Shown one piece after another: positions 456 through 52,070 of a stretch of 64,000 bases of DNA. The stretch lies in NCBI GenBank assembly GCA_002269645.1, contig NIVC01001195.1, positions 248,001-312,000 on the forward strand, in the 5' to 3' direction. Each line of letters begins with the position of its first letter. The first letter of the stretch is position 1. A program made the position numbers and the translations under genes. The notes beneath the pieces are model-generated. The model searched no databases and was not told where the DNA came from. It worked only from the letters and a program-made list of their open reading frames with translations. This DNA comes from Macrostomum lignano (Eukaryota).

Positions 456-3400
456 ATGACTAAGCTCCACGCTGCCAAAGGAGCGACATTCTGTCTGCAA
501 ATAAATTTACAGCATTGCGTATCTGCGTCAGTAAATCTGATGAAGATTGCTGAGCTGTACAGGCCAGGCCTCATCCTGATCCAGGAACCCTGGATGCGCA
601 ACGGTAAGTTGCCCAACATTCCCTCTGGCTACTCTGATTTTTATGTGTGTGGCCCGGGAACAGCCGCCCTAGAGCGGCTATCCTCGCTGCTAGCCATCTC
701 CAGGCTTGGCTGAGGACTGATCTCTCTGATGGAGACCTTTGCGTCATCCAATCTAATCATTTCTCTCCGCGTACGTGTCTTGTTGCCTCGGTTTATATCC
801 CAGGCGACAGAGACCCTGCTCCGAGAGTTTACTGCGCCTTGCGCAGTACTGCGAGTCCCAGAACGCTGAGCTGTGCTTAGGGGGCGACCTCAACGCGCAC
901 CACAAGCACTGGGGCAGCAAAGATACCAACACTAGAGGAGAGGAGCTTCTGGCCCTCATCTCTAACACAAACCTCATGCTCTGCAACCGCGGCAGCACTC
1001 CTACCTTTAATAATGGCAGATGGACCGAGGTCCTCGACGCCACACTCGTTACCCCAAGACTCTTTGACAGAGTCAAGGAGTGGAGAGTCTGGTCTGAGGA
1101 GCCCTCCCTGTCTGACCACTGCTTTATCGCCTTTAATATCGCGGACACTAAAACCCAGTCTCCGATCACTTGGAGACGCAATATCCGCAACACTGATTGG
1201 GCGGCCTACAAGGCTGCCCTTGATCTGCACCTGCAGGAACTCACGGACTTACGTCCGATTGAGACCTGCGAGGATGTGGATCATATGGCTGAGACGCTGA
1301 CAGGTTGCATTATTGCAGCCTACGAAGCGGCTTGTCCTGCTCGCGCCTACAGAGGCAAGACCTCGGCGCCGTGGTGGAACCCGGAGCTGGGGAAACTCAG
1401 GCGGAAGGCCAAAAGCCTTCATCGCCGTGCCATGAAGACCGGAAACCCGGAGGACATGGAGCTTTTCCGGCAAGCCTCCCGCAATTTCAAATCTGAAGTG
1501 CGCAAGGCCAAGGAATGTAAGTGGCGCCAATTCTGCAATGAATTGGATCAAGACAGACCTACTTCTAGGCTTGTCAAGGCCCTTACAATGGACAAAATGT
1601 CCAAATTAGCCATGATCAAAAAAGATGATGGCTCTCTTACTAAAGACCCTGAAGAAGTGCTTCAGCATATGCTTAGCACATTCTTCCCGAGGGTACCTAC
1701 TGCTAGACCGGAGCCCAACCATTCGATGGATGGAGCCACCCTAGCGGCGGGCATTGTCACTGAAGACCTAATCGCTCGTGCGGTCAGAACCTTCAAACCC
1801 TTCAAATCTCCTGGACCTGATGGTATCTACCCTGTTCTCCTTCGTGAAGCAGCCAAGATACCCTCGTTCCTGAGACTCACCCGCAATCTTATGCGGGCCT
1901 CTATCCAGCTGGGATACGTTCCCAAAAGCTGGACTGAAGCTCGAGTAGTCTTTATTCCCAAACCTGGGAAGGGTGACTACCAAAGCGTCAAGGCCTTCCG
2001 GCCAATTAGCTTAACGTCAGCAATGCTTAAGCTCACTGAGAGGCTTATTCTCTGGCGGCTGCTCTCCTGCGAGCTGACAGCGATGCCCCTCAGCAATAAT
2101 CAGCACGCCTTCCGTACCGGGAGGTCGACTGACAGCGCCCTGCATGCGATTGTCGAAAAGATTGAACGGGCGGTACTGGGTGACGGTTACGCCCTGGCTC
2201 TCTTTCTTGACATTGTTGGCGCCTTCGACAACGTTATCTTTGAAGCGTTTCAGAGGGCCCTTCAAAATCGCAAAGCTCATGCTACCCTCATACGGTGGAT
2301 CATGTACATGATCTCCAACCGTACGGTCACTGCCCAACTTCTTGGGCAAACTGCCTCCACCAGAGTCTGTAAGGGTGGACCCCAAGGCGGAGTCCTCACC
2401 CCGACGCTCTGGAACCTGGTCATGGACGCTCTTCTGAGTGACTCCCGACCTGACCCCGTCTTCAAAGTCGGGTATGCTGATGACGTCACGGCCATTGTGG
2501 CAGGACCGTCTCCCAGCACGCTCAGGGATCTGATGCAGAGCTTTATCCGCAAAGCAGAATCCTGGGCCAATGACAATGGTTTGGAACTCTCTGAGCCCAA
2601 AACCGTTGCCATTATGTTTACCAGCAGACTACGCTGGAACATACGTCCTCTGCAGCTCTACGGCAGAGATATTGCCTTCGCGCACCAGACCAGATGTCTC
2701 GGGGTCACACTTGACCACCGGCTCAACTGGTCCTTCCACGTGAAAGCAAAAGCTAAGCGTGCCTCAGCCATCCTGGCCCAGCTCCGACGAGCACTTGGCA
2801 CTTCTTGGGGTCTATCCCCAAAGCGGCTTTGGTGGATCTATACTTCCGTAGTTAGACCTGCCATTACGTACGCCTCTGTTGTCTGGGTTAGCGCTACCCA
2901 GGTCAAAAGCCATGCAGACCTGCTCAACACGATCCAAGGCAGAGCGTGTAGGCTCATCTGCAACGCCACCAGGTCCACGCCCTTTGCTGGCATGGGGGCC
3001 TTTCTTAATCTTCCGCCTCTTGACCTCTTCATCAGGGGTGAGGCGGCTAGAACGACGCGGCGTCTAATTGATGCCGGCGTCAAATTCATTTACATGAGAG
3101 CACCTGCTAAGCGGAACCTTGTCCCGCATAGCGATCTGTGCCTCAACTTTCTCAACGAGTGTCAGGCCAATCGCGTCTTCACCGATGGCATTGCCTCAAC
3201 GCTCAACCTGAGACAGCGCTACTCCGTAGCTATCGACTCGCGCGATAACATCAATGACCATTGGAACCCTGGTGAGCTTCATTGCTACACCGACGGTTCT
3301 AAGCAGTCAGCCAACACCGGCTTTGGTGTTGGAATCTTTCTGAACGGGAGGGTCATCGCTACCCACGCTCAATACACTGGGGTCAACTCCAGTGTTTTCC

Positions 3401-4194
3401 AAAATGAAGTTCTGGCCATCAGCTCCTGCACTGCAGAGCTTCTCGCCACTGGCGTTACTGGTAAGAACATCATTTTCCATTCGGACAGCCAAGCTGCCTT
3501 GCACGCCATCAGTGGCTGCAGCACCAACTCTGCTACAGTCCTTGACTGTATCAAACTCCTCAATGTGTTGGGTTCCGCCAACAAAATTACCCTTAAGTGG
3601 GTTCCGGGGCATGTGGGGATCCGAGGAAATGAGTTGGCTGACACCCTTGCAAAAGTTGGTGCCTCCGGCTCCTCTCTCGGCCCCGAACCTCTTGTCCCGA
3701 TTCCTGGCTGTGTCATCGACTCGCGCATCAAAGCGTGGATCAGGACTCAGCACCGCTCGACTTGGGCGAACCGCACGAACTGCAGGCAATCCAGAGGCGC
3801 TGTCCCTCAGCCCTCTCACCAGCTCCGGAAGCTCCTCTTGCGCCTCTCGCGCAGAGACATCCGGGCTGCCACCATGACCCTCTCTGGTCACGGCTGCTTC
3901 TCCAGGCACCAGTACCTGCAGGGCAACGCCACCAACGCCACCTGTAGTTTCTGCAACTCAGGTGACGAAACCGCTGAGCATTTCGTCAGCATCTGTCCCG
4001 CCTTCACGCGGGCCAGACTCACTTACCTCGGGCCACACACATCTATTACTGAAGCGTGCAAACCCGAAAACTTTAATCAGCTCATGCGCTACCTTCGGGC
4101 CACCCGCAGGGCTGAACTCTCCTTTCCAGAGAGCACCATAGCTGCTGGCGACACTGGGGGACCTCCCTGGGCGGCGCCAACCCTCCGTCCATAG
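456..4194 (+). CDS. LINE ORF2 polyprotein (endonuclease, reverse transcriptase, RNase H, zinc knuckle) with two -1 frameshifts in the endonuclease (~655, ~825)
   Basis: Three overlapping ORFs (456.., 647.., 775..4194) together give a continuous APE domain. The 1139-aa ORF is uninterrupted from mid-APE to the C-terminus. Confidence 0.9.
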
Positions 4195-8600: not shown

Positions 8601-11600
8601 TCATTGGCAGGTAAAACCGGTTAGTGGCGACTGAACGATGCGTCCAAGAAGTGATGTAAACCCCAGTCCAAGGAGTGACGGAAATTCCAGTCCAGGGAGT
8701 GACGGAAATCCCAGTCCAAGAAGTGACGGAAACCCCAGTCCAAGGAGTGACGGAAACCCCAGTCCAGAGAATGACGGAAATCCCAGTCTAAGGAGTGACC
8801 GAAAGCCCAGTCTGGGTTTTTTAAGGTTGGAAATCCAGTTGCCAATGGCTATTTTTGGTTGCCCATTGGCAACTAGCTAAATTCTCAAGGACAGACTAAG
8901 CACTGTATGACTGCAGGAATAAGACTGTCTGGGACTTGTTATTTGCATTTTAATTTTTCGCAACTTAGTATTTGCCACAACTTAGATTCATATGGCACTT
9001 TTATTATACTTTACAAAATCATTTTTTGAAATTGGCAACTGGCACAGGGAAAATAAAGTTGCCAGATTGGCCTCTGATGCCAAAAATCCAGTTGCCAATG
9101 AGATTTTTAAGGGGCCAAAAACCCAAATGGCCCAAAAAATAAACCCAGAGCCCAGTCTAAAGAGTGACGGAAATCCCAGTCTAAGGAGTGACGGAAATCC
9201 CAGTCTAAAGAGTGACGGAAATCCCAGTACAAGGAGTGACGGAAATCCCAGTCCAAGGAGTGACGGAAATCCCAGTCTAAAGAGTGACGGAAATCCCAGT
9301 CCAAGGAGTGACGGAAATCCCAGTCCAAGGAGTGACGGAAATCCCAGTCCAAGGAGTGACGGAAATCCCAGTCCAAGGAGTGACAGAAATCGATCCCAGT
9401 CAAATGAGTGACCTAAATAGCACTTACGAGAACATCTCAGGCTCCGCAGGCGCCATCTGTGCAAGCGCGCTTCCCAACGAAGACTTGCCGAGAGCGCAGC
9501 AGTGGCTCGGCAGACTGCCGCAGCTGCTGGTGCTGTTGTGCCGGTGGGTCCTGCTGTCAGCCGCGGTCGAGACTGGCGGCGTCAGGGCAGTTGGCCGGAA
9601 CAGGGTGACCGGCGCAGACGGCTGGTACTTGCTGCGCTCGGCGTCTGTGCGCCTTTCGAATTTCTTAAAATCCATCTTGTGCTTGCGGTCGGCGCCCTTC
9701 GGCTTGAACACCTGCGCGCCGGTCACGGGGGGGGCGCTGCGACTCAGGGCAAGGCGGCTGGAGAAGAGAGCACAGGTGTGGGCCAAAGGAACGGAGGGAT
9801 GGGGAATTGTGAGGGAGGGATGGGGAATTGTAAGGGAGGGACGGGGAATTGTGAGGGGCGGATGGGGATGTGAGGGAGGGATGGGGATGTGAGGGAGGGA
9901 TGGGGAATTGTGAGGGAGGGATGGGGATGTGAGGGAGGAATGGGGATGTGAGGGAGGGATGGGGAATTGTGAGGGAGGGATGGGGAATTGTGAGGGAGGG
10001 ATGGGGAATTGTGAGGGGCGGATGGGGAATTGTGAGGGAGGGATGGGGATGTGAGGGAGGGATGGGGAATTGTGAGGGGAAGTGGGAGGGGAAGTGGGGA
10101 TGGGGAATTGTGAGGGAGGAATGGGGAATTGTGAGGGAGGAATGGGGATTTGTGAGGGAGGGATGGGGAATTGTGAGGGAGGAATGTGGATTTGTGAGGG
10201 AGGGATGGGGAATTGTGAGGGAGGGATGGGGAATTGTGAGGGAGGGATGGGGAATTGTGAGGGAGGGATGGGGATTGTGAGGGAGGGATGGGGAATTATG
10301 AGGGGAAGTGGGAGGGGAAGTGGGGATGGGGAATTGTGAGGGAGGAATGGGGAATTGTGAGGGAGGAATGGGGATTTGTGAGGGAGGGATGGGGAATTGT
10401 GAGGGAGGAATGTGGATTTGTGAGGGAGGGATGGGGAATTGTGAGGGAGGGATGGGGAATTATGAGGGGAAGTGGGAGGGGAAGTGGGGATGGGGAATTG
10501 TGAGGGGAAGTGGGAGGGGAAGTGTGGATGGGGAATTGTGAGGGAGGAATGGGGAATTGTGAGGGAGGAATGGGGATTTGTGAGGGAGGGATGGGGAATT
10601 GTGAGGGAGGGATGGGGATGTGAGGGAGGGATGGGGAATTGTGAGGGGAAGTGGGAGGGGAAGTGGGGATGGGGAATTGTGAGGGAGGAATGGGGAATTG
10701 TGAGGGAGGAATGGGGATTTGTGAGGGAGGGATGGGGAATTGTGAGGGAGGAATGTGGATTTGTGAGGGAGGGATGGGGAATTGTGAGGGAGGGATGGGG
10801 AATTGTGAGGGAGGGATGGGGAATTGTGAGGGAGGGATGGGGATTGTGAGGGAGGGATGGGGAATTATGAGGGTAAGTGGGAGGGGAAGTGGGGATGGGG
10901 AATTGTGAGGGAGGGATGGGGAATTGTGAGGGAGGGATGGGGAATTATGAGGGGAAGTGGGAGGGGAAGTGGGGATGGGGAATTGTGAGGGAGGAATGGG
11001 GATTTGTGAGGGAGGGATGGGGAATTGTGAGGGAGGGATGGGGAATTGTGAGGGAGGAATGGGGATTTGTGAGGGAGGGATGGGGAATTGTAAGGGAGGG
11101 ATGGGGAATTGTGAGGGAGGGATGGGGATTGTGAGGGAGGGATGGGGAATTATGAGGGGAAGTGGGAGGGGAAGTGGGGATGGGGAATTGTGAGGGAGGA
11201 ATGGGGATTTGTGAGGGAGGGATAAGGAATTGTGAGGGAGGGATGGGGAATTGTGAGGGAGGGATGAGGAATTGTGAGGGAGGGATGGGGATTGTGAAGG
11301 ACGGATGAGGAATTGTGAGGGAGGGATGGGGATTGTGAGGGAGGGATGGGGAATTGTGATGGAGGGATGGGGATTGTGAAGGACGGATGAGGAGTTGTGA
11401 GGGAGGGATGGGGAATTGTGATGGAGGGATGGGGAATTGTTAGGGGAAGTGGGGATGGGGAATTGTGAGGGAGGGATGGGAATAGTGAGGGGAAGTGGGA
11501 AGGGAATGGGGAATTGTGGGGGAAGTGATAGGGGAATGGGGAATTGTGAAGGAGTGATGGTGAAAGTGAGGGGAAGCGGAGGAAATGGGGAATTGTGAGG

Positions 11601-18970: not shown

Positions 18971-21900
18971 ATGACAGGTTCTTCACCAGACTTGCTTGGT
19001 CGTCGCATTGAACTAGATGGCCATTTTGGCATTGTGAAATACATTGGGCCAGTGGGGAGCAGTCGAGACACCTGGTTGGGGATAGACTGGGACGAACCTG
19101 AGCGCGGCCGGCACAATGGCACCCACAATGGAGTGCAGTACTTTAAGGTAGGTGTTGCATAAATTTGTCCCTTGGCTGCTCTCAGTCATGGGAAAATGTG
19201 CACTGCATAAGGCCAATAAGTTACTATTAAAAAGCATAAAAAGCTGAAATGGTTTCTGAGAAGCTTTCATAACACAAAAAATTAGTGGGAAGAATGATAA
19301 AAGGCACAACCTGAAAAGTAGAACCAGAAGCATGATAAAAGACACAACCTAAAGAGTTGGAAGTATGATGAAAGACAACCTGAAGAGTTGGGAGTATGAT
19401 GAAAGACAACCTGAAGAGTTGGGAGTATGATGAAAGACAAGCTGAAAAGTTGGGAGTATGATGAAAGACAAGCTGAAGAGTTGGGAGTATGATGAAAGAC
19501 AAGCTGAAGAGTTGGGAGTATGATGAAAGACAAGCTGAAGAGTTGGGAGTATGATGAAAGACAACCTGAAGAGTTGGGAGTATGATGAAAGACAAGCTGA
19601 AGAGTTGGGAGTATGATGAAAGACAAGCTGAAGAGTTGGGAGTATGATGAAAGACAACCTGAAGAGTTGGAAGTATGATGAAAGACAACCTGGAGAGTTG
19701 GAAGTATGATGAAAGACAAGCTGAAGAGTTGGGAGTATGATGAAAGACAACCTGAAGAGTTGGAAGTATGATGAAAGACAAGCTGAAGAGTTGGAAGTAT
19801 GATAAAAGACACAACCTGAAGAGTCGGAAGTATGATAAAAGACACAACCGTAAGAGCCGGAAGTATAATAAAAGAAATAGCCGAAAAAGCTTCAGTTACA
19901 TTAGCTTATGTCACGTGACAGTTGATTCATCCTATAAAGGTTTACATGTGTGCCATATGCAAGCAGATAAATCTCCAGGCAGTTCTGCTGTCCCAATGCT
20001 TGCATCCTGACAAGTCCCAATCCCGCGCATTCACCAGGCTGCGCAGGCCACGTCAGCCTCCTTCGTGAAGGCCAGCCGCGTCAATGCGGGCATCGGGCTG
20101 CTGGAAGGCATTATTCAGCGGTACACCGCGCCAACGGACGATTTCTGTGGACTCAGCCAGGCCGAGCTGGCATTCGAAGGCGATCACAACAGGGATGCCA
20201 AGCCTATTGAGCTGTTCGGCATGGTCAAGACGGCTCAGCGAATTTCACAGCTGGCAACGCTGCAGTCGGTCCTGCTGACGGGTGAAGTTCTGCTCCTTGC
20301 ACCTGCTGCTTGTGCTGAGATTGGGGACCTGGTTGTCGTATGTAAAAGCAAGAAAATTCCTATTATGAAGATAATAGCCCCTAAAATCTATATCATTGCG
20401 TGGGGAATCCCTATTCTTCAGTGAGGACCCCATTTAGGGAGTCGTTTCGTTAGCGCTTAACTTTCTACTGACTCAAGTAGACTAAATAGAGTTTTTTTAA
20501 TGCGAAAGCGATTCTAATTCAGAAAGTGCCGCCGAGCAGATGCACTTTAGACTCAACTCAGTGATTCTACTGCGACTATCTCGCCTCAAGTACGACTCCA
20601 CAGCCCCAGAGTCACTTGCGTTGTTCCAGAGTCGTTTCAGAGTCGCAGACAATAAAACGCCTCAAATGGACTCTTAGGCAACTCTTGAACGACTTTTTGA
20701 CAATTTGTACCGTAACCTTGAGTGGGGAATCCCTATTCTTGCTTGGGAAATCTCTATTCTTGCTTGGGAAATCTCTATCCTTGAGTGGGGAATCCCTATC
20801 CTTGAATGTGGGGAATCCCTATCCTTGAGTTGGGAATCCCTATCCTTGAGTGGGGAATCCCTATCCTTGAGTGGGGAATCCCTATTCTTGCGTGGGAAAT
20901 CCCCATCCTTAAGTGGGGAATCCCTGTCATTGGTTGTGGAATCTCTATAATTTAGTGGGGAATCCCTATAACTGAGTGGGGAATCCATTTTCTTAATTGG
21001 GCAGTCCCTATGATTGAGTGGAAAATCTGTAACCATGATTTGGAAATTCCTATTTTTTAGCGAGGAATCCCTATTCTTCAGCGTGGAATCCCTATTATTC
21101 ATCGGGGAATCCCTATTCTTCAGCTGGGAATCCCTATTCTTCAGCTGGGAATCCCTATTCTTCAGCGGGGAATCCCTATTTTTCAGCGGTAATCCCTATT
21201 TATTACTGAGAAATTCTTTAAATATCTAATAATGGGTAAATATCTCTAATAACCAATATTTGGATCTCACGATTGTAGATTTTTCATCACGTATAAAATA
21301 TTGGTTTCAATTGCAGTCTAAGATTTGAAATGCAAATCCTGTTATTTATAACCGCATCAAATTTCTGCACCCAGGCGTTCCCGTGGCATTCTGCAGCACC
21401 GAAGATGCCAGCGAACTGAGCAGCCGCCTGCCCAGTCTCACCGAGCTGGACCTGAGTCTCACCCTGTTCCACGACTGGGTCGAGTTGGCCAGAGTGGCCA
21501 AGGCTCTGCCAAATCTTCGGGTGCTCAATCTCAGCCAGAATGTGCTCGCCTCGCCTGTTGGTGCGTGCGGTGGACTGACTGTAATGTTTTTATTAGGATA
21601 GAAATGTATTTCTAACAGGTACAGGTAGATAGAGGGAGATAGAACAGGTAGATAACGGCAGATGAAACAGGTAGATAATGGTAGATAGAACAGGTAGATA
21701 ATGGCAGATAGAACAGGTAGATAACGGCAGATAGAACAGGTAGATAACGGCAGATAGAACAGGTAGATAACGGCAGATAGAACAGGCAGGCAACCCAATG
21801 GGTGCCAGATCGCAGCTCGCCAACTCCCCGCAGGTTTTGTCCCCGACCCAGCCGACTCATTCGGCTCGCTGGAGTCTCTGGTGCTCAACAAGGTCGGTCT

Positions 21901-24140
21901 CGACTGGCCCGAATGTTTAACGTTGTGGCGCCTGGCGCCAAAACTGCGCCGATTGGCGCTGTCGCACAACGCCATCTCGGCCGTCACCGGGGACCTGCCG
22001 GAGCACGCGGCCAACCTGCTTGAGCTCGACCTGGCCTTCAATCCGCTGGACTCCAACTGCATGGCCGGTCTGAGCTGCCGTTTGCCCAGTTTGAAATTGC
22101 TGAACCTGGCCGGCTGCCAGCTGACCGAGTTCAGCCTCCCGGATGAGGCTCAGGTAAAATATTGCAACGACTCAAACAAATGTGCTTTAGTCTACAGCGA
22201 CTTTGGCACGCCGCAGATACGACTCTACGGCCCCAGAATCACCACAGAGTCGCAGACAATAAAACACCTCAAACTGACTTGAGCGACTCTTTGGCGTTGT
22301 TTTAGAGTCCTCTAGAGTCACTTCTTTCCTTTCTTACCTGTGTTACCTAAAACGACTCTGGGAAATCTATTTGTAACTCGCCTGCATGAGGATGGATAGC
22401 GGACCATAAAACTGCTCAACACTTCACAGGCCCCGTTCCCATCGCTGGAGTCGCTGGCTCTGTCCGGCAATCGCCTGGCTGACTGGGCCTCCGTGTCCCA
22501 GCTGCACCGGCTGCCCAAGCTCAGCTCGCTAATCCTGCTGGATAACCCTCTGTGGACTGCTCAGGACGAGGCCACGTCTAGGTTTGTAATGCTAGCATAT
22601 TGTGGTCTTGTGTCTTTGTTCCTGATGTCTGATTCCCAGTGTGTCTTTGTTCCTGTTCTGTCTGATTCCCAGTGTGTCTTTGTTCCTGTTCTGTCTGATT
22701 CCCAGTGTGTCTTTGTTCCTGATGTCTGATTCCCAGCGTGTCTTTGTTCCTGTCCTGTCTGATTCCCAGTGTGTCTTTGTTCCTGTCCTGTCTGATTCCC
22801 AGTGTGTCTTTGTTCCTGATGTCTGATTCCCAGTGTGTCTTTGTTCCTGTCCTGTCTGATTCCCAGTGTGTCTTTGTTCCTGTCCTGTCTGATTCCCAGT
22901 GTGTCTTTGTTCATGTCCTGTCTGATTCCCAGTGTGTCTTTGTTCCTGTCCTGTCTGATTCCTAGTGGAAATCCTATTGAATTATTAGGAGTGCCTTTGT
23001 TCAAATTCTATCTATTCTACCTGTAGTGCATGAAACTTGAATTAATTATTAAAGTAAGAAATAAGTCTTCGTTCCAGCCGGCCACACTCAGCCCCCAGCC
23101 CGCCTCAACCCAACACAGGCAGCTGGCCATCGCCCGCCTGCCCCGCCTGCGGCTGTTGAACCGCAGCCGTATCGAGCGCGACGAGCGGTTCGGGGCCGAG
23201 ATCGACTACCTGAAGCGGCACTACGCCCAGTACCGCGATCTCACGGCGGCCGGCGGCGACCCGGAAGCTGCAGCCAAATTTAAGCGGCTTCATCCAAGCC
23301 TGCCAGTCCTATTAGACAAGCTGGGCGCCCCGGATGAGGCCGAGATGGCCGGGACGGCGGCGCGGGCGCTGAAGGACTCGGTGCTGGAGGTGCGGCTGCG
23401 CTGCAAGCGGGCCGACACGGGAGAGGTGAGGAGGCCGCTGAAGTGCTGAAGTGGAACTGTTTAGCTAATACTGACTGCCACTTGAATTAGCTCGAAAACC
23501 CCAAAGTATCTCCGTGAATTCTCAAGAATCGCCCTGAACCATCCTGAAGAATCGCCCTGAACTATCCTGAAGAATCGCCCTGAACCATCCTGAAGAATCG
23601 CCCTGAACCATCCTGAAGAATCGCCCTGAACAAACCCCAAGAATCGCCCTGAACAAACCCCAAGAATCGCCCTGAACAAACCCCAAGAATCGCCCTGAAC
23701 AAACCCCAAGAATCGCCCTGAACAAACCCCAAGAATCGCCCTGAACAAACCCAAGAATCGCCCTGAACAAACCCCAAGAATCGCCCTGAACAAACCCCAG
23801 GAATGGCCCTGAACAAACCCCAAGAATCGCCCTGAACAAACCCCAAGAATCGCCCTGAACAAACCCCGAGAATCGCCCTGAACAAACCCCAAGAATCGCC
23901 CCGAACCCACAGGAGAGCAAGCAGATGGCAGTCACGAAGCGCCTGCCGGGCCGCATGCTGGTGCAGCACCTGATCGCCTTCATCCGCAAGGCCTTCCGGC
24001 TGCCGCCAACAGCCCATGTTGAGCTTTTCTACCTGTGCGACAATATGCCGGGCATCGAGTACCCCATGGAGGTGGAGACTCGCGAAGTGCTGTACTACAA
24101 TATCGCCTCTGGGGACACGATTCTGGCCAAGTACTCATGA
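18971..24140 (+). CDS. TBCE: Tubulin-specific chaperone E (CAP-Gly, LRR, UBL), ~537 aa, 7 exons
   Basis: Exons 18971-19147, 20038-20281, 21375-21560, 21834-22153, 22430-22581, 23119-23425, 23913-24140, all GT-AG and in phase. CAP-Gly WLGIDWDEPERGRHNGTHNGVQYFK, LRR repeats, ERFGAEIDYLK, C-terminal UBL KRLPGRMLV..LYYNIASGDTILAK. Confidence 0.95.
19290..19870. repeat. 31-nt minisatellite in TBCE intron 1
   Basis: unit gaagagttgggagtatgatgaaagacaagct. Confidence 0.95.
20720..21200. repeat. ~21-nt degenerate minisatellite in TBCE intron 2
   Basis: core gggaatccctattctt. Confidence 0.9.
21615..21790. repeat. 23-nt minisatellite in TBCE intron 3
   Basis: unit gatagaacaggtagataacggca. Confidence 0.92.
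22615..22965. repeat. 30/33-nt minisatellite in TBCE intron 5
   Basis: unit ctgattcccagtgtgtctttgttcctgtcctgt. Confidence 0.95.
23525..23905. repeat. 23-nt minisatellite in TBCE intron 6
   Basis: units gaatcgccctgaaccatcctgaa then gaatcgccctgaacaaaccccaa. Confidence 0.95.
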
Positions 24141-24561
24141 CGAGCTGATGGAGAGCTTGTGAAGCTGTTCTGCTTTCTAGCGACCTGCGTTTCTATCATT
24201 TTGTTATACTTTTTCAAACCCGCTGCTTCCATTGAGCCAGTGGTAGATGAGGCCCTTTTTATTTCATTTTTGTTTTGTAAATATATGCAGTACCCGAGTA
24301 GCAGCGTTGCTTTTTGGATTTGAGTTTGATCAGTTCTGAAGCAGTTCTACCTGGTTAGCCTCTTTCTCTTTGTTATTTTTCCTTCGGATGACATAGATTT
24401 AATAGGTAGGTTGATTGAATAATGTAAATCAGCAGCAACCAGGTGTGCTAGAGTTCAATAGCAGTGTCACAGGCTGTGTCCCGTGCGGATTAACAAATTA
24501 TAAATGTCTCACTGTGTGTGTCTGTATGTATTTAACGGAACAGATTGGGCCTAAGATGATA

Positions 24562-24562
24562 T

Positions 24563-24617
<55 letters not shown>

Positions 24618-24747
24618 GGACAGGCACTAAGACAGACACTAAAACGCAGAGACAGACAGACAAACTGGCAGACAGACAGACAGACAGATAGACAGCCAGC
24701 CACTTAGTCGGACAGACAGACAGACAGACAGACAGACGGGCAGACAG

Positions 24748-24782
<35 letters not shown>

Positions 24783-24823
24783 GGCAGACAGACAGACAGC
24801 CAGCCACTTAGTCGGACAGACAG

Positions 24824-24858
<35 letters not shown>

Positions 24859-24940
24859 GGCAGACAGACAGACAGACACATAGACAGACAGGCAGACAGA
24901 CAGACAAGACACTTAGACAGACAGACAGACGGGCAGACAC
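24562..24940. repeat. (CAGA)n microsatellite between TBCE and DCTD
   Basis: gacagacagaca.. with interruptions. Confidence 0.97.
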
Positions 24941-25017
24941 ACATGAGCAGATATTTAGCAGCTTAATGTCAGCATGGCCGGCAGCTCAAGATTCCAAACG
25001 CAACCCTTGGTTTCCAG

Positions 25018-26417
25018 GCGAACAGCTGCAGTTCGCAGAGCAGCGGTGAGTCGGGTAAGCGAGCTGACTACATCAGCTGGGAGGAGTACTTCATGTCCGT
25101 TGCCTTCCTGTCTGCCCAGAGGAGCAAGGACCCGGCGACGCAGGTGAGGCCAAGGCGGGTGGGGGGGCAGAGCAGCTCAAGCGGTTTCGATTTCTTGGGC
25201 GGCCACAATAATTTGGGACTTTTGCACGAAACGCGCAGGAAGGCCGACCCCAAGGGACAGGGTATTTACATGCCTGCCGTTGATCTCAGGACCACTGTAC
25301 ACCCCGTGTGAGCGGAATGGACATGCCTGCCGTTGATCTCAGGACCACTGTACACCCCGTGTGAGCGGAATGGACATGCCTGCCGTTGATCTCAGGACCA
25401 CTGTACACCCCGTGTGAGCGGAATGGACATGCCTGCCGTTGATCTCAGGACCACTGTACACCCCGTGTGAGCGGAATGGACATGCCTGCCGTTGATCTCA
25501 GGACCACTGTACACCCCGTGTGAGCGGAATGGGCATGCCTGCCGTTGATCTCAGGACCACTGTACACCCTGTGTGAGCGGAATGGACATGCCTGCCGTTG
25601 ATCTCAGGACCACTGTACACCCCGTGTGAGCGGAATGGACATGCCTGCCGTTGATCTCAGGACCACTGTACACCCCGTGTGAGCGGAATGGACATGCTGT
25701 CGTTGATCTCAGGACCACTGTACACCCCGTGTGAGCGGAATGGACATGCCTGCCGTTGATCTCAGGACCACTGTACACCCGTGTGAGCGGAATGGACATG
25801 GCTGCCCGACTGCCTAGCGGCAGCGCCCACTTCCCCCTTTGCTAGCAGTGACAGATAGGGAGTTGCCTAGTCAGAGCTTATTCCTTAGTCTTGTCTAAGC
25901 TGTCATAATATGAAACCGGCCGATATGTATGGTAAAACACTCTGCAAAGCGGATTTTGCCTATTCGCACTCAGGTAGGCTGCTGCATTGTAAACAAGCAG
26001 CGCAAAATTGTGGGCGTTGGCTACAACGGCATGCCGATCGGCTGCTCGGACGATCAGTTGCCATGGCAACGCCAGACGCCGGGCGATCCGCTGGGCTCGA
26101 AGTATCTGTTTGTCTGCCACGCGGAGATGAACGCCATCATGAATAAGAACTCCGCCGACGTGCGCGACTGCACCCTGTACGTGGCCCTGTTCCCCTGCAA
26201 CGAGTGCGCCAAGATCATCGTGCAGTCGGGCATCACCGAGGTGGTGTACCTGTCCGACAAGTACTGCGGCACCGTGCAGAACGAGGCGGCCAAAAGAATC
26301 TTTCGGATGGCCGACGTGAAGTTCAGGCAGTTCACGCCGAGCCGACGGTCCATTGTGATCGACTTCGACCAGCTGCCGGAAGAGACCGAGGCGGCGCTGG
26401 CACTGACCCTGCGGTAG
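25018..26417 (+). CDS. DCTD: dCMP deaminase; exons 25018-25143 and 25974-26417; start codon not found in frame in the genome
   Basis: [29 protein letters not shown]|VGCCIV..GYNGMP, zinc motifs CHAEMNAI and PCNEC. Acceptor tttccag|GCG at 25017/25018. In-frame TAA at 24964 with no in-frame ATG until 25093. Confidence 0.95.
25269..25800. repeat. 53-nt minisatellite (~10 copies) in the DCTD intron
   Basis: unit catgcctgccgttgatctcaggaccactgtacaccccgtgtgagcggaatgga, head-to-tail with no spacers. Confidence 0.97.
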
Positions 26418-26499
26418 AACCTGTCTGGAATTGTGTCAAGGTCTCAGCAGAACATTGAATGCGAGTTTCGAGTTTCGCTATAATCCCTGGGAATCGCAT

Positions 26500-27735
26500 T
26501 AAACCAACCTGAAGAATCGCCCTGAACCATCCTAAAGAATCGCCCTGAACCAACCTGAAGAATCGCCCTAAACCATCCTGAAGAATCGCCCTGAACCATC
26601 CTGAAGAATCGCCCTGAACCATCCTGAAGCATCGCCCTGAACCAACCTGATGAATCGCCCTGAACCATTCTGAAGGCTCGCCCTGAACCATCCTGAAGAC
26701 TCGCCCTGAACCATCCTGAAGAATCGCCCTAAACCATTCTGAAGAATCGCCCTGAACCATCCTGATGAATCGCCCTGAACCATCCTGAAGAATCGCCCTG
26801 AACCATCCTGAAGAATCGCCCTGAACCATCCTGAAGAATCGCCCTGAACCATTCTGAAGAATCGCCCTGAACCATCCTGAAGAATCGCCCTGAACCAACC
26901 TGAAGAATCGCCCTGAACCATCCTGAAGAATCGCCCTGAACCATCCTGAAGAATCGCCCTGAACCATCCTGAAGAATCGCCCTGAACCATTCTGAAGAAT
27001 CGCCCTGAACCATCCTGAAGAATCGCCCTGAACCATCCTGAAGAATCGCCCTGAACCATCCTGAAGAATCGCCCTGAACCATCCTGAAGAATCGCCCTGA
27101 ACCATCCTGAAGAATCGCCCTGAAACATCCTGAAGAATCGCCCTGAACCATCCTGAAGAATCGCCCTGAACCAACCTGAAGAATCGCCCTGAACCATCCT
27201 GAAGAATCGCCCTGAACCATCCTGAAGAATCGCCCTGAACCATCCTGAAGAATCGCCCTGAACCATTCTGAAGAATCGCCCTGAACCATCCTTAAGAATC
27301 GCCCTGAACCATCCTGAAGAATCGCCCTGAACCATCCTAAAGAATCGCCCTGAACCATCCTGACGAATCGCCCTGAACCATCCTGAAGAATCGCCCTGAA
27401 CCATCCTGAAGAATCGCCCTGAATCATTCTGAAGAATCGCCCTGAACCATCCTGAAGAATCGCCCTGAACCATCCTGAAGAATCGCCCTGAAACATCCTG
27501 AAGAATCGCCCTGAATCATTCTGAAGAATCGCCCTGAACCATCCTGAAGAATCGCCCTGAAACATCCTGAAGAATCGCCCTGAATCATTCTGAAGAATCG
27601 CCCTGAACCATCCTGAAGAATCGCCCTGAAACATCCTGAAGAATCGCCCTGAACTATCCTGAAGAATCGCCCGGAACCATCCTGAAGAATCGCCCTGAAC
27701 CATTCTGAAGAATCGCCCTGAACTATCCTCAAGAA
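26500..27735. repeat. 23-nt minisatellite downstream of DCTD, same family as TBCE intron 6
   Basis: unit gaatcgccctgaaccatcctgaa. Confidence 0.97.
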
Positions 27736-28330
27736 TGCGGTGGTGTTGAATTTTGGCTATATTTACTGTTATTAACCAATCCTGCAAAACGCAGCTGTTT
27801 AGCTTTTAGAAAATTCCGAAGGTTAGAAAATGTTTGCTTCGCTACTAGCTGTCACATATAAGTAGTGACCTATGGCTTTTATGGCAAACAATTTTTTTAA
27901 GCTTCTTATGGTGCTGATTAAGTGCTGTCAATCTGTTATCTGAAATTTTACTTGCATTTGTATTCGATATCTTCATCAGCAGCAATTACAAGCGTATTAT
28001 AATAATAATTTTTATATTTAAATAATTTTTCACAGTTTCGATAATAACTAATTCTACAAGTGAATTTTAACAATAAAATATTTTATTTATATTTAGTTTA
28101 ATAATAACAAATATACTTTGTAGTTCGCTTCCACCAGCATTTTTTTCCTATTTCGAATTAAGTCGGTCTTCATTTAAACAAAAAACGGCTTAAGTTTAAA
28201 CATTTTAGACATCTCTTTTTAAACAACTCTTGTGCTGCTCTCGTTCCAGAGGTGTCTGCGTTTTGAATTTTCGCGATAAAAAATTTCAAAGCCGGAAAAG
28301 TGCGTTAAAAAGGAAACGTTATAATTGGCC

Positions 28331-31300
28331 ATGGCCGCCTCGTCCGCCGGTTCTGACGGCCCGCCATCGGTGCCGCAGTTCAACATCACCGGCCGGCTCG
28401 GGGCTGGCACCTACGCCACCGTCTACCAGGCCATTAGACAGGTGTGAAAGCTGAGTCCAGACTGTGGGAAGTCGAAGGCTGCCTGTTTTGCGCAGCAAAA
28501 TCAGAGTTTGGAAAAGCGATAACCGGGGCAGAGCAGATGAGCGTCAAATGGGCCAGAGGGTACATGCTCGGCGATTAGAATGCCAGGGTCGCTGTTCACC
28601 CTGAGTGAGCGTGTGTATGATTGCGTGCTTGCGTACAGTATTGGGGGGGGGCTTGTATGTGCTCAGAAGTCTGTTTTAACTCCCACAATGATCCATAGCA
28701 ACTCCCACAAACGTCCATAGCGACTCCCACAATGATCCATAGCAACTCCCACAATAATCCATAGCAACTCCCACAAACGTCCATAGCGACTCCCACAATG
28801 ATCCATAGCAACTCCCACAATGATCCATAGCAACTCCCACAAACGTCCAAAGCGACTCCCACAATGATCCATAGCAACTCCCACAATGATCCATAGCAAC
28901 TCCCACAAACGTCCATAGCGACTCCCACAATGAGCCATAGCAACTCCCACAATGATTCATGGCAACTCCCACAATGAGCCATAGCAACTCCATGGCAACT
29001 CCCACAATGATCCATAGCAACTCCCACAATGAGCCATAGCAACTCCATGGCAACTCCCACAATGATCCATAGCAACTCCCACAATGAGCCATAGCAACTC
29101 CCACAATGAGCCATAGCAACTCCTACAATGATCCATGGCAACTCCCACAATGAGCCATGGCAACTCCCACAGTGAACCATAGCAACCCCCACAATGATCC
29201 ATGGCAACTCCCACAATGATCCATAGCAACTCCCACAATGATCCGTAGCAACTCCCAGGATGAGCCATAGCAACTCCCACAGTGAACCATGGCAACTCCC
29301 ACAATGATCCATGGCAATTCCCACAATGAGCCATGGCAACTCCCACAATGAGCCATGGCAACTCCCACAATGAGCCATGGCAACTCCCACAATGAGCCAT
29401 GGCAACTCCCACAGTGAACCATAGCAACTCCCACAGTGAACCATAGCAACTCCCACAATGATCCATGGCAACTCCCACAATGAGCCATGGCAACTCCCAC
29501 AATGAGCCATGGCAATTCCCACAATGAGCCATGGCAATTCCCACAATGAGCCATGGCAACTCCCACAATGAGCCATGGCAACTCCCACAATGAGCCATGG
29601 CAACTCCCACAGTGAACCATAGCAACTCCCACAGTGAACCATAGCAACTCCCACAATGATCCATGGCAACTCCCACAATGAGCCATGGCAACTCCCACAA
29701 TGAGCCATGGCAATTCCCACAATGAGCCATGGCAACTCCCACAATGAGCCATGGCAACTCCCACAATGAGCCATGGCAACTCCCACAGGGAACCATAGCA
29801 ACTCCCACAGTGAACCATAGCAACTCCCACAATGATCCATGGCAACTCCCACAATGATCCATGGCAACTCCCACAATGAGCCATAGCAACTCCCACAGTG
29901 AACCATAGCAACTCCCACAATGATCCATGGCAACTCCCACAATGAGCCATAGCAACTCACACAGTGAGCCATAGCAACTCCCACAATGATCCATGGCAAC
30001 TCCCACAGTGAACCATGGCAACTCCCACAATGAGCCATGGCAACTCCCACAATGAGCCATAGCAACTCCCACAATGATCCATGGCAACTCCCACAATGAG
30101 CCATGGCAACTTCCACAATGAGCCATGGCAACTCACACAGTGAGCCATGGCAACTCACACAGTGAACCATGGCAACTCCCACAGTGAACCATGGCAATTC
30201 CCACAATGATCCATGGCAACTCCCACAATGAGCCATAGCAACTCCCACAGTGAACCATAGCAACTCCCACAATGATCCATGGCAACTCCCACAATGAGCC
30301 ATGGCAACTCCCACAGTGAACCATAGCAACTCACAATGGCTCTTCCAACTTGCAGGGCGGCTCTCGCGAGGTGGTGGCCATCAAATGCGTGAGCAAGAAG
30401 AGCCTGACCAACACTTCTAAAGAGAATCTGCTCAAAGAGATCGAGCTGTTGAAAACGCTGAACCATCCGCATATTGTCCGGTTGATTGACTTCGTGTGGG
30501 ACGCGAATCACATTCACCTCATCCTGGAGTACTGCTCAGGTGGCGACCTGCTGCGGTTTATCAAGCTGCGCCGCTGCCTGTCCGAGTCTGTGAGTCTGGC
30601 GTGCCTTCTGTTGATGCAGTGGATTCGGTCTCAGTAAAGTAGGTCACCTTGGAGCATTCAAGATTGGAGATTTAAATCAGGGCTGGGGTGATAAGAATGG
30701 AGGAGGTAGATTAGACTTAGCTGATGAGAGGATGGGATTAGATGATGAAAGGATGGGATTAGATGATGAGAGGATGGGATTAGATGATGAGAGGATGGAA
30801 TTACATGTAGATGATGAGAGGATGGGATTAGATTATTAGAGGATGGGATTAGATGATGAGAGGAAGAGATTAGGTTATTAGAGGATGGGATTAGGTTATT
30901 AGAGGATGGGATTAGATGATGAGAGGATGGGATTAGGTTATTAGAGGATGGGATTAGGTTATTAGAGGATGGGATTAGATGATGAGAGGATGGGATTAGG
31001 TTATTAGAGGATGGGATTAGATGATGAGAGGATGGGATTAGATGATGAAAGGATGGGATTAGATGATGAGAGGATGGGATTAGATGATGAGAGGATGGGA
31101 TTACATGTAGATGATGAGAGGATGGGATTACATGTAGATGATGAGAGGATGGGATTAGATTATTAGATGATGGGATTAGATGATGAGAGGAAGAGATTAG
31201 GTTATTAGAGGATGGGATTAGATGATGAGAGGATGGGATTACATGTAGATGATGAGAGGATGGGATTACATGTAGATGATGAGAGGATGGGATTAGATTA

Positions 31301-49949: not shown

Positions 49950-50399
49950 CTCATCTGCGAGTCATCTGCAGTCCCGCGCCTGCATTGAACGTTTTGTGCA
50001 TTTTGGTTGGCTTAAAATCGTCCAATTCTGTGCAAAACTTTCCAACTTATTTTCCATACTACTGACTACTTTAGCTGCTAGTAGTAAGAGGAATTGACTC
50101 GCTACATTTGCATTTTTACGCTTAGCAGTTTGGAGTTAAGTTCGATGTTAAATTATCTGCTGTTGCTTGAATACACCGGTATTTTACCTGTATTGCTTGT
50201 TAATCAGGTAATGTTTTTGTATCTATTTCACACATTCTTTGTTTTTGTCACTAATTTTTAAAATGTAAACTGGTACCTTTAAACAGAAAATGTAAAGTAA
50301 ACCGGTGTCTTTAAGTGTGAACTGAAATTTAAACTTGTAACTTGAGTCATAAACTTCAATCAATGTAAAGTGATATCTTGAAACACAAAGTTTAAGGTA

Positions 50400-52070
50400 A
50401 ATTGGTATCTTGAAACACAAACTGCAAGGTAAACTGGTTTTTGGATCATAAACTGCAAGGTAAACTGGAATTTTATGTCATAAACTGCAAGATAAACTGG
50501 TATTTTGAGTCATAAACTGCAAGGTAAACTGGTATTTTGGGTCATCAACTGCAAGGTAAACTGGTATTTTGGGTCATAAACTGCAAGATAAACTGGTATT
50601 TTGAGTCATAAACTGCAAGGTAAACTGGTATTTTGGGTCATCAACTGCAAGGTAAACTGGTATTTTGGGTCATAAACTGCAAGATAAACTGGTATTTTGA
50701 GTCATAAACTTCAAGGTAAACTGGTACTTTGAGTCATAAACTGCAGGGTAAACTGGTATTTTGAGTCATAAACTGCAAGGTAAACTGATATTTTGGGTCA
50801 TAAACTGCAAGGTAAACTGGTATTTTGGGTCATAAACTGCAAGGTAAACTGGTATTTTGAGTCATCAACTGCAAGGTAAACTGGTATTTTGAGTCATCAA
50901 CTGCAAGGTAAACTGGTATTTTGAGTCATCAACTGCAAGGTAAACTGGTATTTTGAGTCATCAACTGCAAGGTAAACTGGTATTTTGAGTCATCAACTGC
51001 AAGGTAAACTGGTATTTTGAGTCATCAACTGCAAGGTAAACTGGTATTTTGAGTCATAAACTGCAAGGTAAACTGGTATTTTGAGTCATAAACTGCAAGA
51101 TAAACTGGTATTTTGAGTCATAAACTGCAAGGTAAACTGGTATTTTGGGTCATCAACTGCAAGGTAAACTGGTATTTTGGGTCATAAACTGCAAGATAAA
51201 CTGGTATTTTGAGTCATAAACTGCAAGGTAAACTGGTATTTTGGGTCATCAACTGCAAGGTAAACTGGTATTTTGGGTCATAAACTGCAAGATAAACTGG
51301 TATTTTGAGTCATAAACTTCAAGGTAAACTGGTACTTTGAGTCATAAACTGCAGGGTAAACTGGTATTTTGAGTCATAAACTGCAAGGTAAACTGATATT
51401 TTGGGTCATAAACTGCAAGGTAAACTGGTATTTTGGGTCATAAACTGCAAGGTAAACTGGTATTTTGAGTCATCAACTGCAAGGTAAACTGGTATTTTGA
51501 GTCATCAACTGCAAGGTAAACTGGTATTTTGAGTCATCAACTGCAAGGTAAACTGGTATTTTGAGTCATCAACTGCAAGGTAAACTGGTATTTTGAGTCA
51601 TCAACTGCAAGGTAAACTGGTATTTTGAGTCATCAACTGCAAGGTAAACTGGTATTTTGAGTCATAAACTGCAAGGTAAACTGGTATTTTGAGTCATCAA
51701 CTGCAAGGTAAACTGGTATTTTGAGTCATAAACTGCAAGGTAAACTGGTATTTTGAGTCATCAACTGCAAGGTAAACTGGTATTTTGAGTCATCAACTGC
51801 AAGGTAAACTGGTATTTTGAGTCATAAACTGCAAGGTAAACTGGTATTTTGAGTCATAAACTGCAAGGTAAACTGGTATTTTGAGTCATCAACTGCAAGG
51901 TAAACTGGTATTTTGAGTCATCAACTGCAAGGTAAACTGGTATTTTGAGTCATCAACTGCAAGGTAAACTGGTATTTTGAGTCATAAACTGCAAGGTAAA
52001 CTGGTATTTCGGGTCATAAACTGCAAGGTAAACTGGTATTTCAGGTCATAAACTGCAAGGTAAACTGGTG
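50400..52070. repeat. 32-nt minisatellite (~50 copies)
   Basis: unit taaactgcaaggtaaactggtattttgagtca. Confidence 0.97.

What the first reader, a model, noticed from the sequence alone, without database searches (positions are those of the whole stretch)
24964..25143. DCTD lacks an in-frame genomic start codon; a spliced-leader AUG would supply it exactly in frame
Seen: the conserved N-terminal block ([13 protein letters not shown]) lies upstream of the first in-frame ATG (25093). The frame is closed by TAA at 24964, and a clean acceptor tttccag|GCG (25017/25018) opens it in phase 0. Upstream is only a (CAGA)n tract and the TBCE 3' UTR, where I found no convincing ATG-bearing exon. Established: flatworm spliced-leader exons end in AUG, which can act as the initiator Met. 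Inference: trans-splicing gives [19 protein letters not shown].., an N-terminus of normal DCTD length, so a nucleotide-metabolism gene would depend on the SL for its start codon.
Basis: partly seen in the sequence, partly recalled or inferred. Interest (0 to 1): 0.78.

Follow-up and report, generated by a model that had tools for sequence, protein, structure and literature searches.

The report
Flatworm DCTD borrows spliced-leader start codon
The dCMP deaminase gene of the flatworm Macrostomum lignano has no start codon of its own in the genome and almost certainly gets its AUG from the trans-spliced leader, which is a real but ordinary example of a mechanism known in flatworms since 2006.

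Summary
The DCTD frame is closed by TAA at 24964-24966. The first in-frame genomic ATG is at 25093, and the conserved [13 protein letters not shown] block (25054-25092) lies upstream of it. TTTCCAG|GCG at 25017/25018 opens the frame in phase 0.

The window is Macrostomum lignano: a UniRef model from that species is 100% identical over 24997-25143. Its 35-nt spliced leader ends in ATG. The published M. lignano annotation flags the DCTD gene (Mlig008437.g9) as TRANSSPLICED and as a stringent neoblast gene.

The acceptor fits the published trans-acceptor motif [T/C]TNCAG. The 877-nt spacer holds no other + strand match and no GT[A/G]AG donor. The three ATGs just upstream of the acceptor are out of frame or terminated.

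The mechanism is not new. Cheng et al. 2006 described the SL AUG as an initiator, Echinococcus surveys found many such mRNAs, and a Macrostomum genome paper calls the SL's final ATG a translation start codon.

Parasitic flatworm DCTD models have genomic ATGs (one confirmed in the conserved-block exon, two on tiny annotated first exons), so the loss may be lineage-specific.

Verdict: new member of a known kind, low interest. The practical lesson is for annotation: the UniProt model is 5'-partial.

The parts
18971..24140 (+). Upstream same-strand gene TBCE. It has a genomic ATG at 18971, a CAP-Gly first exon and a stop TGA at 24138-24140. It is the likely upstream cistron of the same transcriptional unit.
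   Evidence: CAP-Gly Pfam hit on 18971-19147. C-terminal exon and stop read. ORF list.
24141..25017 (+). Intercistronic spacer or outron, removed by trans-splicing. It contains the TBCE 3' UTR, a TATAAA at 24499 and the (GACA)n tract.
   Evidence: No GT[AG]AG donor on the + strand. Only weak ATG..GT combinations exist. Poly(A)-like hexamers are listed.
24563..24943 (+). (GACA)n microsatellite, 95 copies, inside the outron. Subtracting it leaves a 496-nt repeat-adjusted distance from the TBCE stop to the acceptor.
   Evidence: TRF. The operon rule of <1 kb repeat-adjusted distance is from PMC8629364.
24964..24966 (+). In-frame TAA that closes the DCTD frame upstream.
25012..25017 (+). Predicted SL trans-splice acceptor TTCCAG, matching the M. 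lignano motif [T/C]TNCAG. Eleven of the 15 bases upstream are pyrimidines. The following base, 25018, is in phase 0.
   Evidence: Motif from PMC8629364.
25018..25143 (+). DCTD exon 1 (42 codons, ANSCSS...DPATQ). With the SL AUG it gives [19 protein letters not shown]...
   Evidence: 100% identical to UniRef A0A1I8HAE0 residues 8-49.
25054..25092 (+). Conserved N-terminal block [13 protein letters not shown], located upstream of any genomic in-frame ATG.
25093..25095 (+). First genomic in-frame ATG. It encodes Met27, the invariant Met of the EYFM motif and an internal residue in all orthologues.
25144..25973 (+). Intron 1 (GTGAGG...CTCAG), phase 0, carrying a 53-bp minisatellite at 25268-25806. 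The intron position after PATQ is shared with Echinostoma caproni.
25974..26417 (+). DCTD exon 2 with the zinc-binding motifs CHAE and PCNEC. The stop TAG is at 26415-26417.
28072..28077 (+). The only canonical AATAAA between the DCTD stop and the next gene. It is a candidate DCTD poly(A) signal (inference).

Best explanation
This is the dCMP deaminase (DCTD) gene of Macrostomum lignano, lying downstream of TBCE on the same strand.

Proposed mechanism: the pre-mRNA is SL trans-spliced. The 35-nt spliced leader, whose last three bases are AUG, is joined most likely to G25018 after the TTTCCAG acceptor. The outron is removed, and with it the (GACA)n tract and three unusable upstream ATGs. The SL's AUG then sits directly in frame, and translation yields a 190-aa enzyme, [27 protein letters not shown]...

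Shown:
- there is no genomic start codon;
- the residues upstream of genomic Met27 are conserved;
- the acceptor matches the motif and is in phase 0;
- the species identity and the SL sequence;
- the published TRANSSPLICED flag for the gene.

Inferred:
- the junction lies exactly at 25017/25018;
- ribosomes initiate at the SL AUG;
- TBCE and DCTD share a polycistronic precursor.
For: (1) Species. UniRef A0A1I8HAE0 (M. lignano dCMP deaminase) is 100% identical over 24997-25143 and across most of exon 2.

(2) The M. lignano SL ends in ATG, and about 30% of its genes are trans-spliced (PMC8629364). A Macrostomum genome paper calls the SL's final ATG a 'translation start codon' (PMC10468722).

(3) M. 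lignano DCTD (Mlig008437.g9 and a second cluster) is annotated TRANSSPLICED from SL-containing RNA-seq reads. I read the '.g9' suffix as one gene cut from a multi-gene transcriptional unit (PMC5816591 supplement; TBONE method in PMC5730564).

(4) TTCCAG at 25012-25017 matches [T/C]TNCAG. It is the first + strand match after the TBCE stop. The only other match, 25026-25031, is out of phase and gives a 6-aa peptide.

(5) Seven of the 11 AGs in the open stretch are in phase 0, so the in-frame outcome does not depend on the exact site.

(6) There is no GT[AG]AG donor anywhere in 24141-25017.

(7) The ATGs at 24943, 24966 and 24974 are terminated or out of frame.

(8) The Pfam domain starts 6 residues before Met27, and the human DCTD structure aligns from K15.

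(9) The SL AUG leaves 14 residues before KR. That lies inside the orthologue range (median 20, interquartile range 7-41).

(10) The repeat-adjusted distance from the TBCE stop is 496 nt, under the published 1-kb operon threshold.

(11) The S. mansoni orthologue Smp_009530 is also SL trans-spliced.
Against: - No read, cDNA or protein showing the SL joined to 25018 could be reached. The protein collection holds no M. lignano transcript-derived DCTD.
- The published flag gives no coordinate, and I cannot prove that Mlig008437.g9 is this exact copy of a duplicated genome. Its listed length (4409) does not map cleanly onto this window.
- The acceptor motif alone is only modestly improbable by chance, at about 0.08.
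- About 35% of M. lignano cis donors lack GT[AG]AG, so a weak-donor mini-exon is not excluded.
- Initiation at the SL AUG is untested for this mRNA.
Confidence: 0.8

Rival explanations
1. A short ATG-bearing exon upstream is cis-spliced to the 25018 acceptor or a neighbouring one, as in the Schistosoma gene models. The start codon would then be genomic after all.
For: Schistosoma and Echinococcus DCTD models begin with tiny ATG mini-exons. Sixty-two ATG..GT..AG combinations in 24141-25017 would keep the frame, for example ATG 24148 with CTT|GTGAAG joined to CTGCAG|25032, or ATG 24247 with TTT|GTAAAT joined to 25018.
Against: None of these donors matches GT[AG]AG. So many chance combinations show that their existence carries no weight. 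All of them lie inside the TBCE 3' UTR, so a DCTD promoter would have to sit inside TBCE. The peptides they encode are not conserved. The gene is annotated as trans-spliced.
Confidence: 0.06
2. An assembly indel is responsible: one base is missing between ATG 24974 and about 24996. The true gene would then start at ATG 24974 (MAGSS...).
For: ATG 24974 is only one frame off, and a single inserted base would bring it in frame. Long-read assemblies do carry indel errors, and the UniRef model shows frameshifts in exon 2 of another copy.
Against: An independent sequence (A0A1I8HAE0) reads the identical frame from 24997 onwards. That leaves only 20 nt with no homopolymer longer than 2. That model is also 5'-partial, so no start codon was found there either. 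The consensus acceptor and the TRANSSPLICED flag are explained without any error.
Confidence: 0.03
3. Translation starts at the genomic Met27 (25093), through leaky scanning past the SL AUG or on transcripts that are not trans-spliced. The enzyme would lack the upstream block.
For: ATG 25093 is the only genomic in-frame ATG. Phage T4 dCMP deaminase has a short N-terminus (own knowledge). The E. granulosus survey notes that not all SL AUGs need be used.
Against: Residues K15-F26 are conserved at the amino-acid level: 9 of 12 are identical to human, and K15, R16, W22 and E24-F26 are invariant in flatworms. That requires them to be translated. Met27 is an internal residue in every orthologue. On a trans-spliced mRNA the SL AUG is the first AUG and is in frame.
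Confidence: 0.05
4. The SL still supplies the AUG, but at another phase-0 AG (24972, 24984, 24990, 25038, 25050 or 25059) instead of or as well as 25017.
For: All of these AGs are in phase 0 and give full-length in-frame proteins of 176-205 aa.
Against: None of them matches [T/C]TNCAG, and their pyrimidine content is 5-8 of 15 against 11 of 15 for 25017.
Confidence: 0.05

Closest known systems
[quoted passage not shown]
   Same: The SL exon ends in AUG. The acceptor lies in frame inside the conserved coding region. No genomic AUG precedes the conserved N-terminal residues. In E. granulosus, 143 of 187 SL-bearing clusters are full length when the SL ATG is used, and 4 of 8 abundant ones require it (PMC3510090).
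   Different: The species is the free-living macrostomorph M. lignano, and the gene is DCTD. In the parasitic flatworm DCTD models I examined, the start codon is genomic, so this gene's dependence appears lineage-specific. I found no experimental proof of translation for it.
slORFs (SL-created open reading frames; slORFfinder, PMC9851317)
   Same: Both rest on the idea that the SL donates the start codon and that genome-only annotation misses the true ORF.
   Different: slORFfinder was applied to nematodes, Oikopleura and trypanosomes with Ribo-seq data, and mostly finds new or alternative ORFs. Here the SL completes the canonical conserved ORF.
Downstream genes of SL-resolved operons (C. elegans SL2 type; M. 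lignano operons of Ustyantsev & Berezikov 2021)
   Same: There is a same-strand upstream gene, a short repeat-adjusted spacer (496 nt, under 1 kb), a trans-splice acceptor at the 5' end, and a '.g9' gene cut from a multi-gene transcriptional unit.
   Different: In nematodes the SL carries no functional initiator. M. lignano has one SL for all targets. Co-transcription of TBCE and DCTD is inferred, not shown.
Human DCTD (PDB 2W4L) and other metazoan dCMP deaminases
   Same: E = 1.2e-70 with alignment over residues 15-179. The HAE and PCxxC zinc motifs and the KRxDY..W.EYFM N-terminal block are all present.
   Different: The human gene, and the orthologue models examined here, encode their own ATG 4-40 residues upstream of the KR block.

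Membership tests
SL-AUG-initiated flatworm mRNA (Cheng et al. 2006 class) | The host has an SL RNA whose exon ends in AUG | tested here: met
   The window is identified as M. lignano. The SL is CGGTCTCTTACTGCGAAGACTCAATTTATTGCATG (PMC8629364).
SL-AUG-initiated flatworm mRNA (Cheng et al. 2006 class) | The mRNA is SL trans-spliced | tested here: met
   Met by literature look-up only. M. lignano DCTD Mlig008437.g9 and the sister cluster are flagged TRANSSPLICED (PMC5816591 Suppl. Table 2). I did not inspect reads.
SL-AUG-initiated flatworm mRNA (Cheng et al. 2006 class) | The acceptor places the SL AUG in frame with the main ORF, with no intervening stop | tested here: met
   The predicted acceptor at 25017/25018 is in phase 0 and gives a 190-aa ORF. 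Seven of 11 candidate AGs are in phase 0.
SL-AUG-initiated flatworm mRNA (Cheng et al. 2006 class) | No genomic in-frame AUG upstream of phylogenetically conserved N-terminal residues | tested here: met
   TAA at 24964, first in-frame ATG at 25093, and the conserved K15-F26 block upstream of it.
SL-AUG-initiated flatworm mRNA (Cheng et al. 2006 class) | The exact SL-exon junction is observed in cDNA or reads | not testable with these tools
   No M. lignano transcript data are in the reachable collections.
SL-AUG-initiated flatworm mRNA (Cheng et al. 2006 class) | Translation initiates at the SL AUG | not testable with these tools
   This needs Ribo-seq, N-terminal proteomics or a reporter assay.
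dCMP deaminase (DCTD, Pfam PF00383) | Cytidine/deoxycytidylate deaminase zinc-binding domain with HAE and PCxxC motifs | tested here: met
   PF00383 at 95.3 bits (cut-off 25), residues 21-136. CHAE and PCNEC are invariant in the alignment. PDB 2W4L matches at E = 1.2e-70.
M. lignano operon, downstream gene (Ustyantsev & Berezikov 2021 criteria) | Same-strand neighbour, downstream gene trans-spliced, repeat-adjusted intergenic distance under 1 kb | tested here: met
   From the TBCE stop at 24140 to the acceptor at 25018 is 877 nt. Subtracting 381 nt of (GACA)n leaves 496 nt. I measured from the stop codon, not from the unknown poly(A) site.
M. lignano operon, downstream gene (Ustyantsev & Berezikov 2021 criteria) | Co-transcription on one precursor RNA | not testable with these tools
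   The only evidence is the '.g9' name, read as a gene cut from a multi-gene transcriptional unit.

The most novel reading that the evidence does not exclude
Macrostomum has lost the genomic DCTD start codon that the parasitic flatworm models retain. This neoblast-enriched nucleotide-metabolism enzyme would then be made only from trans-spliced mRNA. SL trans-splicing efficiency would act as an obligatory gate, and possibly a regulatory one, on dTTP-precursor supply in stem cells.
Probability: 0.1. Interest if true: 0.45.

Novelty: new member of a known kind. Interest (0 to 1): 0.2.

Why it matters
The main consequence is for annotation and experimental design.

- **Annotation.** Genome-only gene callers cannot find a start codon for such genes. 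The public M. lignano model (UniRef A0A1I8HAE0) is 5'-partial and reads through the acceptor. Pipelines for SL-using flatworms should test 'SL-AUG + acceptor' ORFs.
- **Reporters.** Transgenic reporters built from such loci need an artificial ATG, or the outron plus acceptor must be kept.
- **Biology.** This is one more conserved housekeeping gene whose expression strictly requires trans-splicing. The genomic ATGs in the parasitic flatworm DCTD models suggest that start codons can be lost once an in-frame SL AUG is available. That fits existing ideas and does not change them.

Tried and rejected
(1) I looked for transcript-derived M. lignano DCTD proteins that would show the N-terminus directly.
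- Two searches of the 5.8-billion-protein collection, one full length and one with an N-terminal query that included the read-through residues, returned only the UniRef genomic model.
- The spliced M-ANSC... protein could not be looked up.
- The exon-2 ORF is not on record.

(2) I tried to use the published transcript length (4409 nt) to back-calculate the 5' end. The implied 3' end falls inside a 22-bp minisatellite with no poly(A) signal, so the check is uninformative. Repeat lengths probably differ between assemblies.

(3) I searched the window for an SL RNA gene and found none.

(4) I searched for DCTD in the supplements of the 2025 flatworm SL paper and found no hits.

(5) Cheng et al. 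2006 is not held in the library. Its content is cited through papers that describe it.

(6) I considered the ATG 24974 ORF, which ends exactly at a consensus donor GCG|GTGAGT at 25046 in phase 0, as an alternative first exon. Splicing it to exon 2 would delete the conserved N-terminal helix, so I rejected it as the route to functional enzyme.

(7) I rejected the idea of a conserved flatworm-wide feature, because the Echinostoma, Schistosoma and Echinococcus models carry genomic ATGs.

Full report
**1. What is in the sequence**

I read 23800-27000 and translated all frames by script.

- The dCMP deaminase frame (positions with mod 3 = 1) is closed by TAA at 24964-24966.
- It then reads [59 protein letters not shown] up to a consensus donor CAG|GTGAGG at 25143/25144.
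- Exon 2 runs from 25974 (after CTCAG|) to TAG at 26415-26417.
- The only in-frame ATG in exon 1 is at 25093.
- TTTCCAG|GCG lies at 25017/25018, and both exons are multiples of three, so this acceptor is in phase 0.
- ATG 24943 is in frame but runs into the TAA (MSRYLAA*). ATG 24966 and ATG 24974 are in the other two frames.

**2. The residues upstream of the genomic ATG are coding**

I numbered the protein from a hypothetical SL Met: M1-A2...K15-R16...M27.

- Pfam PF00383 matches residues 21-136 starting at profile position 2 (95.3 bits).
- Human DCTD (PDB 2W4L, E = 1.2e-70) aligns from K15 as [13 protein letters not shown] / KRDDYLEWPEYFM.
- In an alignment with 19 flatworm DCTD sequences, K15, R16, W22 and E24-M27 are invariant.

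Met27 is therefore an internal residue of a conserved helix, not a plausible N-terminus.

**3. Whose genome this is**

The best-matching named protein is UniRef A0A1I8HAE0, 'dCMP deaminase, Macrostomum lignano'.

- A local tblastn shows it is 100% identical to 24997-25143 and to most of exon 2.
- It is frameshifted in the last third of exon 2, so it comes from another copy or assembly.
- That model begins [13 protein letters not shown]... It has no Met and reads straight through the acceptor, so the annotators found no start codon either.

The density of 20-55-bp minisatellites is compatible with this repeat-rich genome.

**4. The spliced leader**

- The M. lignano SL is the 35-mer CGGTCTCTTACTGCGAAGACTCAATTTATTGCATG.
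- About 30% of genes are SL trans-spliced.
- The enriched trans-acceptor motif is [T/C]TNCAG, and the cis-donor motif is GT[G/A]AG.
- Operons are called when the repeat-adjusted spacer is under 1 kb (PMC8629364).

**5. Published evidence for this gene**

Supplementary Table 2 of Grudniewska et al. 2018 (PMC5816591) lists the M. lignano DCTD homologue.

- Entries: Mlig008437.g9; clusters MligTCv3c-16405.0 and .1; human DCTD hit at 3e-77.
- Both clusters are marked {TRANSSPLICED} and 'Neoblast, stringent'.
- In that annotation, trans-splicing is called from SL-containing RNA-seq reads mapped to the genome. Genes are 'cut' out of multi-gene transcriptional units by the TBONE pipeline (PMC5730564).
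- I read the suffix .g9 as marking a gene cut from a polycistronic unit.

This is independent experimental support that DCTD mRNA carries the SL. It does not give the junction coordinate.

**6. The acceptor**

- On the + strand, the only YTNCAG matches between the TBCE stop (24140) and the conserved block are 25012-25017 and 25026-25031.
- The second is out of phase. An SL AUG joined there would give MFAEQR*.
- Of the 11 AG dinucleotides in the open stretch, 7 are in phase 0, because they end in-frame CAG, AAG or GAG codons.
- The AG at 25016-25017 has the best pyrimidine tract, 11 of 15.
- From the shuffles, the chance expectation of a phase-0 motif match in the 90-nt open stretch is about 0.08.

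The motif is modest evidence alone but coherent with everything else.

**7. Alternatives**

*Cis exon.*
- No GT[AG]AG exists on the + strand anywhere in 24141-25017.
- With any GT allowed, 62 ATG..GT..AG combinations keep the frame. This shows that such combinations arise by chance.
- All of them lie in the TBCE 3' UTR and encode unconserved peptides.
- Strong-donor candidates exist only inside TBCE coding exons.

*Indel.*
- ATG 24974 would come into frame with one extra base.
- The independent UniRef copy fixes the frame from 24997, leaving 20 nt without homopolymers longer than 2.

*Initiation at Met27.* This contradicts the conservation described in section 2.

**8. Context**

- TBCE lies upstream on the same strand, with a CAP-Gly first exon and a genomic ATG at 18971. 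Its stop is at 24138-24140.
- The spacer to 25018 is 877 nt, of which 381 nt are (GACA)n. That gives 496 nt repeat-adjusted.
- If the TATAAA at 24499 marks the TBCE 3' end (inference), the adjusted distance is about 110 nt. That is near the roughly 100-bp mode reported for M. lignano operons.
- Downstream, a ULK3-like kinase (Pkinase and MIT domains) starts with its own ATG at 28332.

Of the three same-strand neighbours, only DCTD lacks a genomic ATG.

**9. Comparison across flatworms**

- S. mansoni DCTD (Smp_009530) is in the SL-trapping list, with a mean of 316.5 reads (PMC5832876 Dataset 5). Trans-splicing of this gene occurs in both lineages.
- The parasitic flatworm models have genomic ATGs.
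- In E. caproni the ATG lies 8 codons before KRTDY in the same exon, and the same phase-0 intron follows PATQ.
- The Schistosoma and Echinococcus models use short ATG mini-exons. I did not verify these models.

Dependence on the SL AUG therefore looks like a Macrostomum-lineage state.

**10. What is known**

- SL-AUG initiation in flatworms was described by Cheng et al. 2006. That paper is not held, but it is described.
- In E. granulosus, 143 of 187 SL-bearing clusters are full length with the SL ATG, and 4 of 8 abundant ones need it to match conserved N-termini.
- slORFfinder generalises the idea.

This finding is a correct, well-supported instance of a known mechanism, in a gene already annotated as trans-spliced.

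**11. Verdict**

- Novelty: new member of a known kind. Interest: about 0.2.
- The useful outcome is the annotation lesson and a concrete junction string to search for in public reads.

Noticed in passing
window 24974-25051: The out-of-frame ORF from ATG 24974 (MAGSSRFQ...RRAA) ends exactly at a perfect donor consensus GCG|GTGAGT (25046) in phase 0, and a second donor-like GTAAG follows at 25055. If it were used with the exon-2 acceptor, it would produce a DCTD lacking the conserved N-terminal helix. This is probably chance or a cryptic site.
   Followed up: partly
window 23523-23906 and 26491-27736: Two arrays of a related 23-bp minisatellite share the core GAATCGCCCTGAAC and bracket DCTD. 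One lies in the last TBCE intron and the other (54 copies) in the DCTD 3' region.
   Followed up: no
window 28245-28334: The ULK3-like kinase gene (Pkinase and MIT domains) has its own ATG at 28332. A TTCCAG| acceptor motif lies at 28245-28250. An SL AUG joined there would open a 10-codon uORF (MRCLRFEFSR*) that ends before the genuine ATG.
   Followed up: partly
window 757-4191 (+): An intact 1145-aa ORF of a non-LTR retrotransposon, with endonuclease (Exo_endo_phos_2), reverse transcriptase (RVT_1) and RNase H domains.
   Followed up: partly
whole window; e.g. 9793-11491, 28678-30332, 50394-52069: Nearly every intron and spacer holds a 16-55-bp minisatellite (46 TRF rows with score of at least 300). 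The 21-bp GGAGGGATGGGGAATTGTGAG array at 9793-11491 gives a GC skew of 0.78.
   Followed up: no
UniRef A0A1I8HAE0 (P0005) versus window 24997-26411: The public M. lignano DCTD model is 5'-partial. It skips VGCCIV...SDDQ and is frameshifted over residues corresponding to 26270-26350. This indicates an error-laden assembly or a decaying paralogue.
   Followed up: partly
L002 1501-1520; L004 1501-1690: The Schistosoma DCTD model starts with a 13-nt coding mini-exon (ATGGTTGATAACG|GTACGT). The Echinococcus multilocularis model implies a GC-AG first intron (TCAG|GCTAGG...TTTCAG|AT). Both 5' ends deserve checking against SL-read data, because S. mansoni DCTD is trans-spliced.
   Followed up: no
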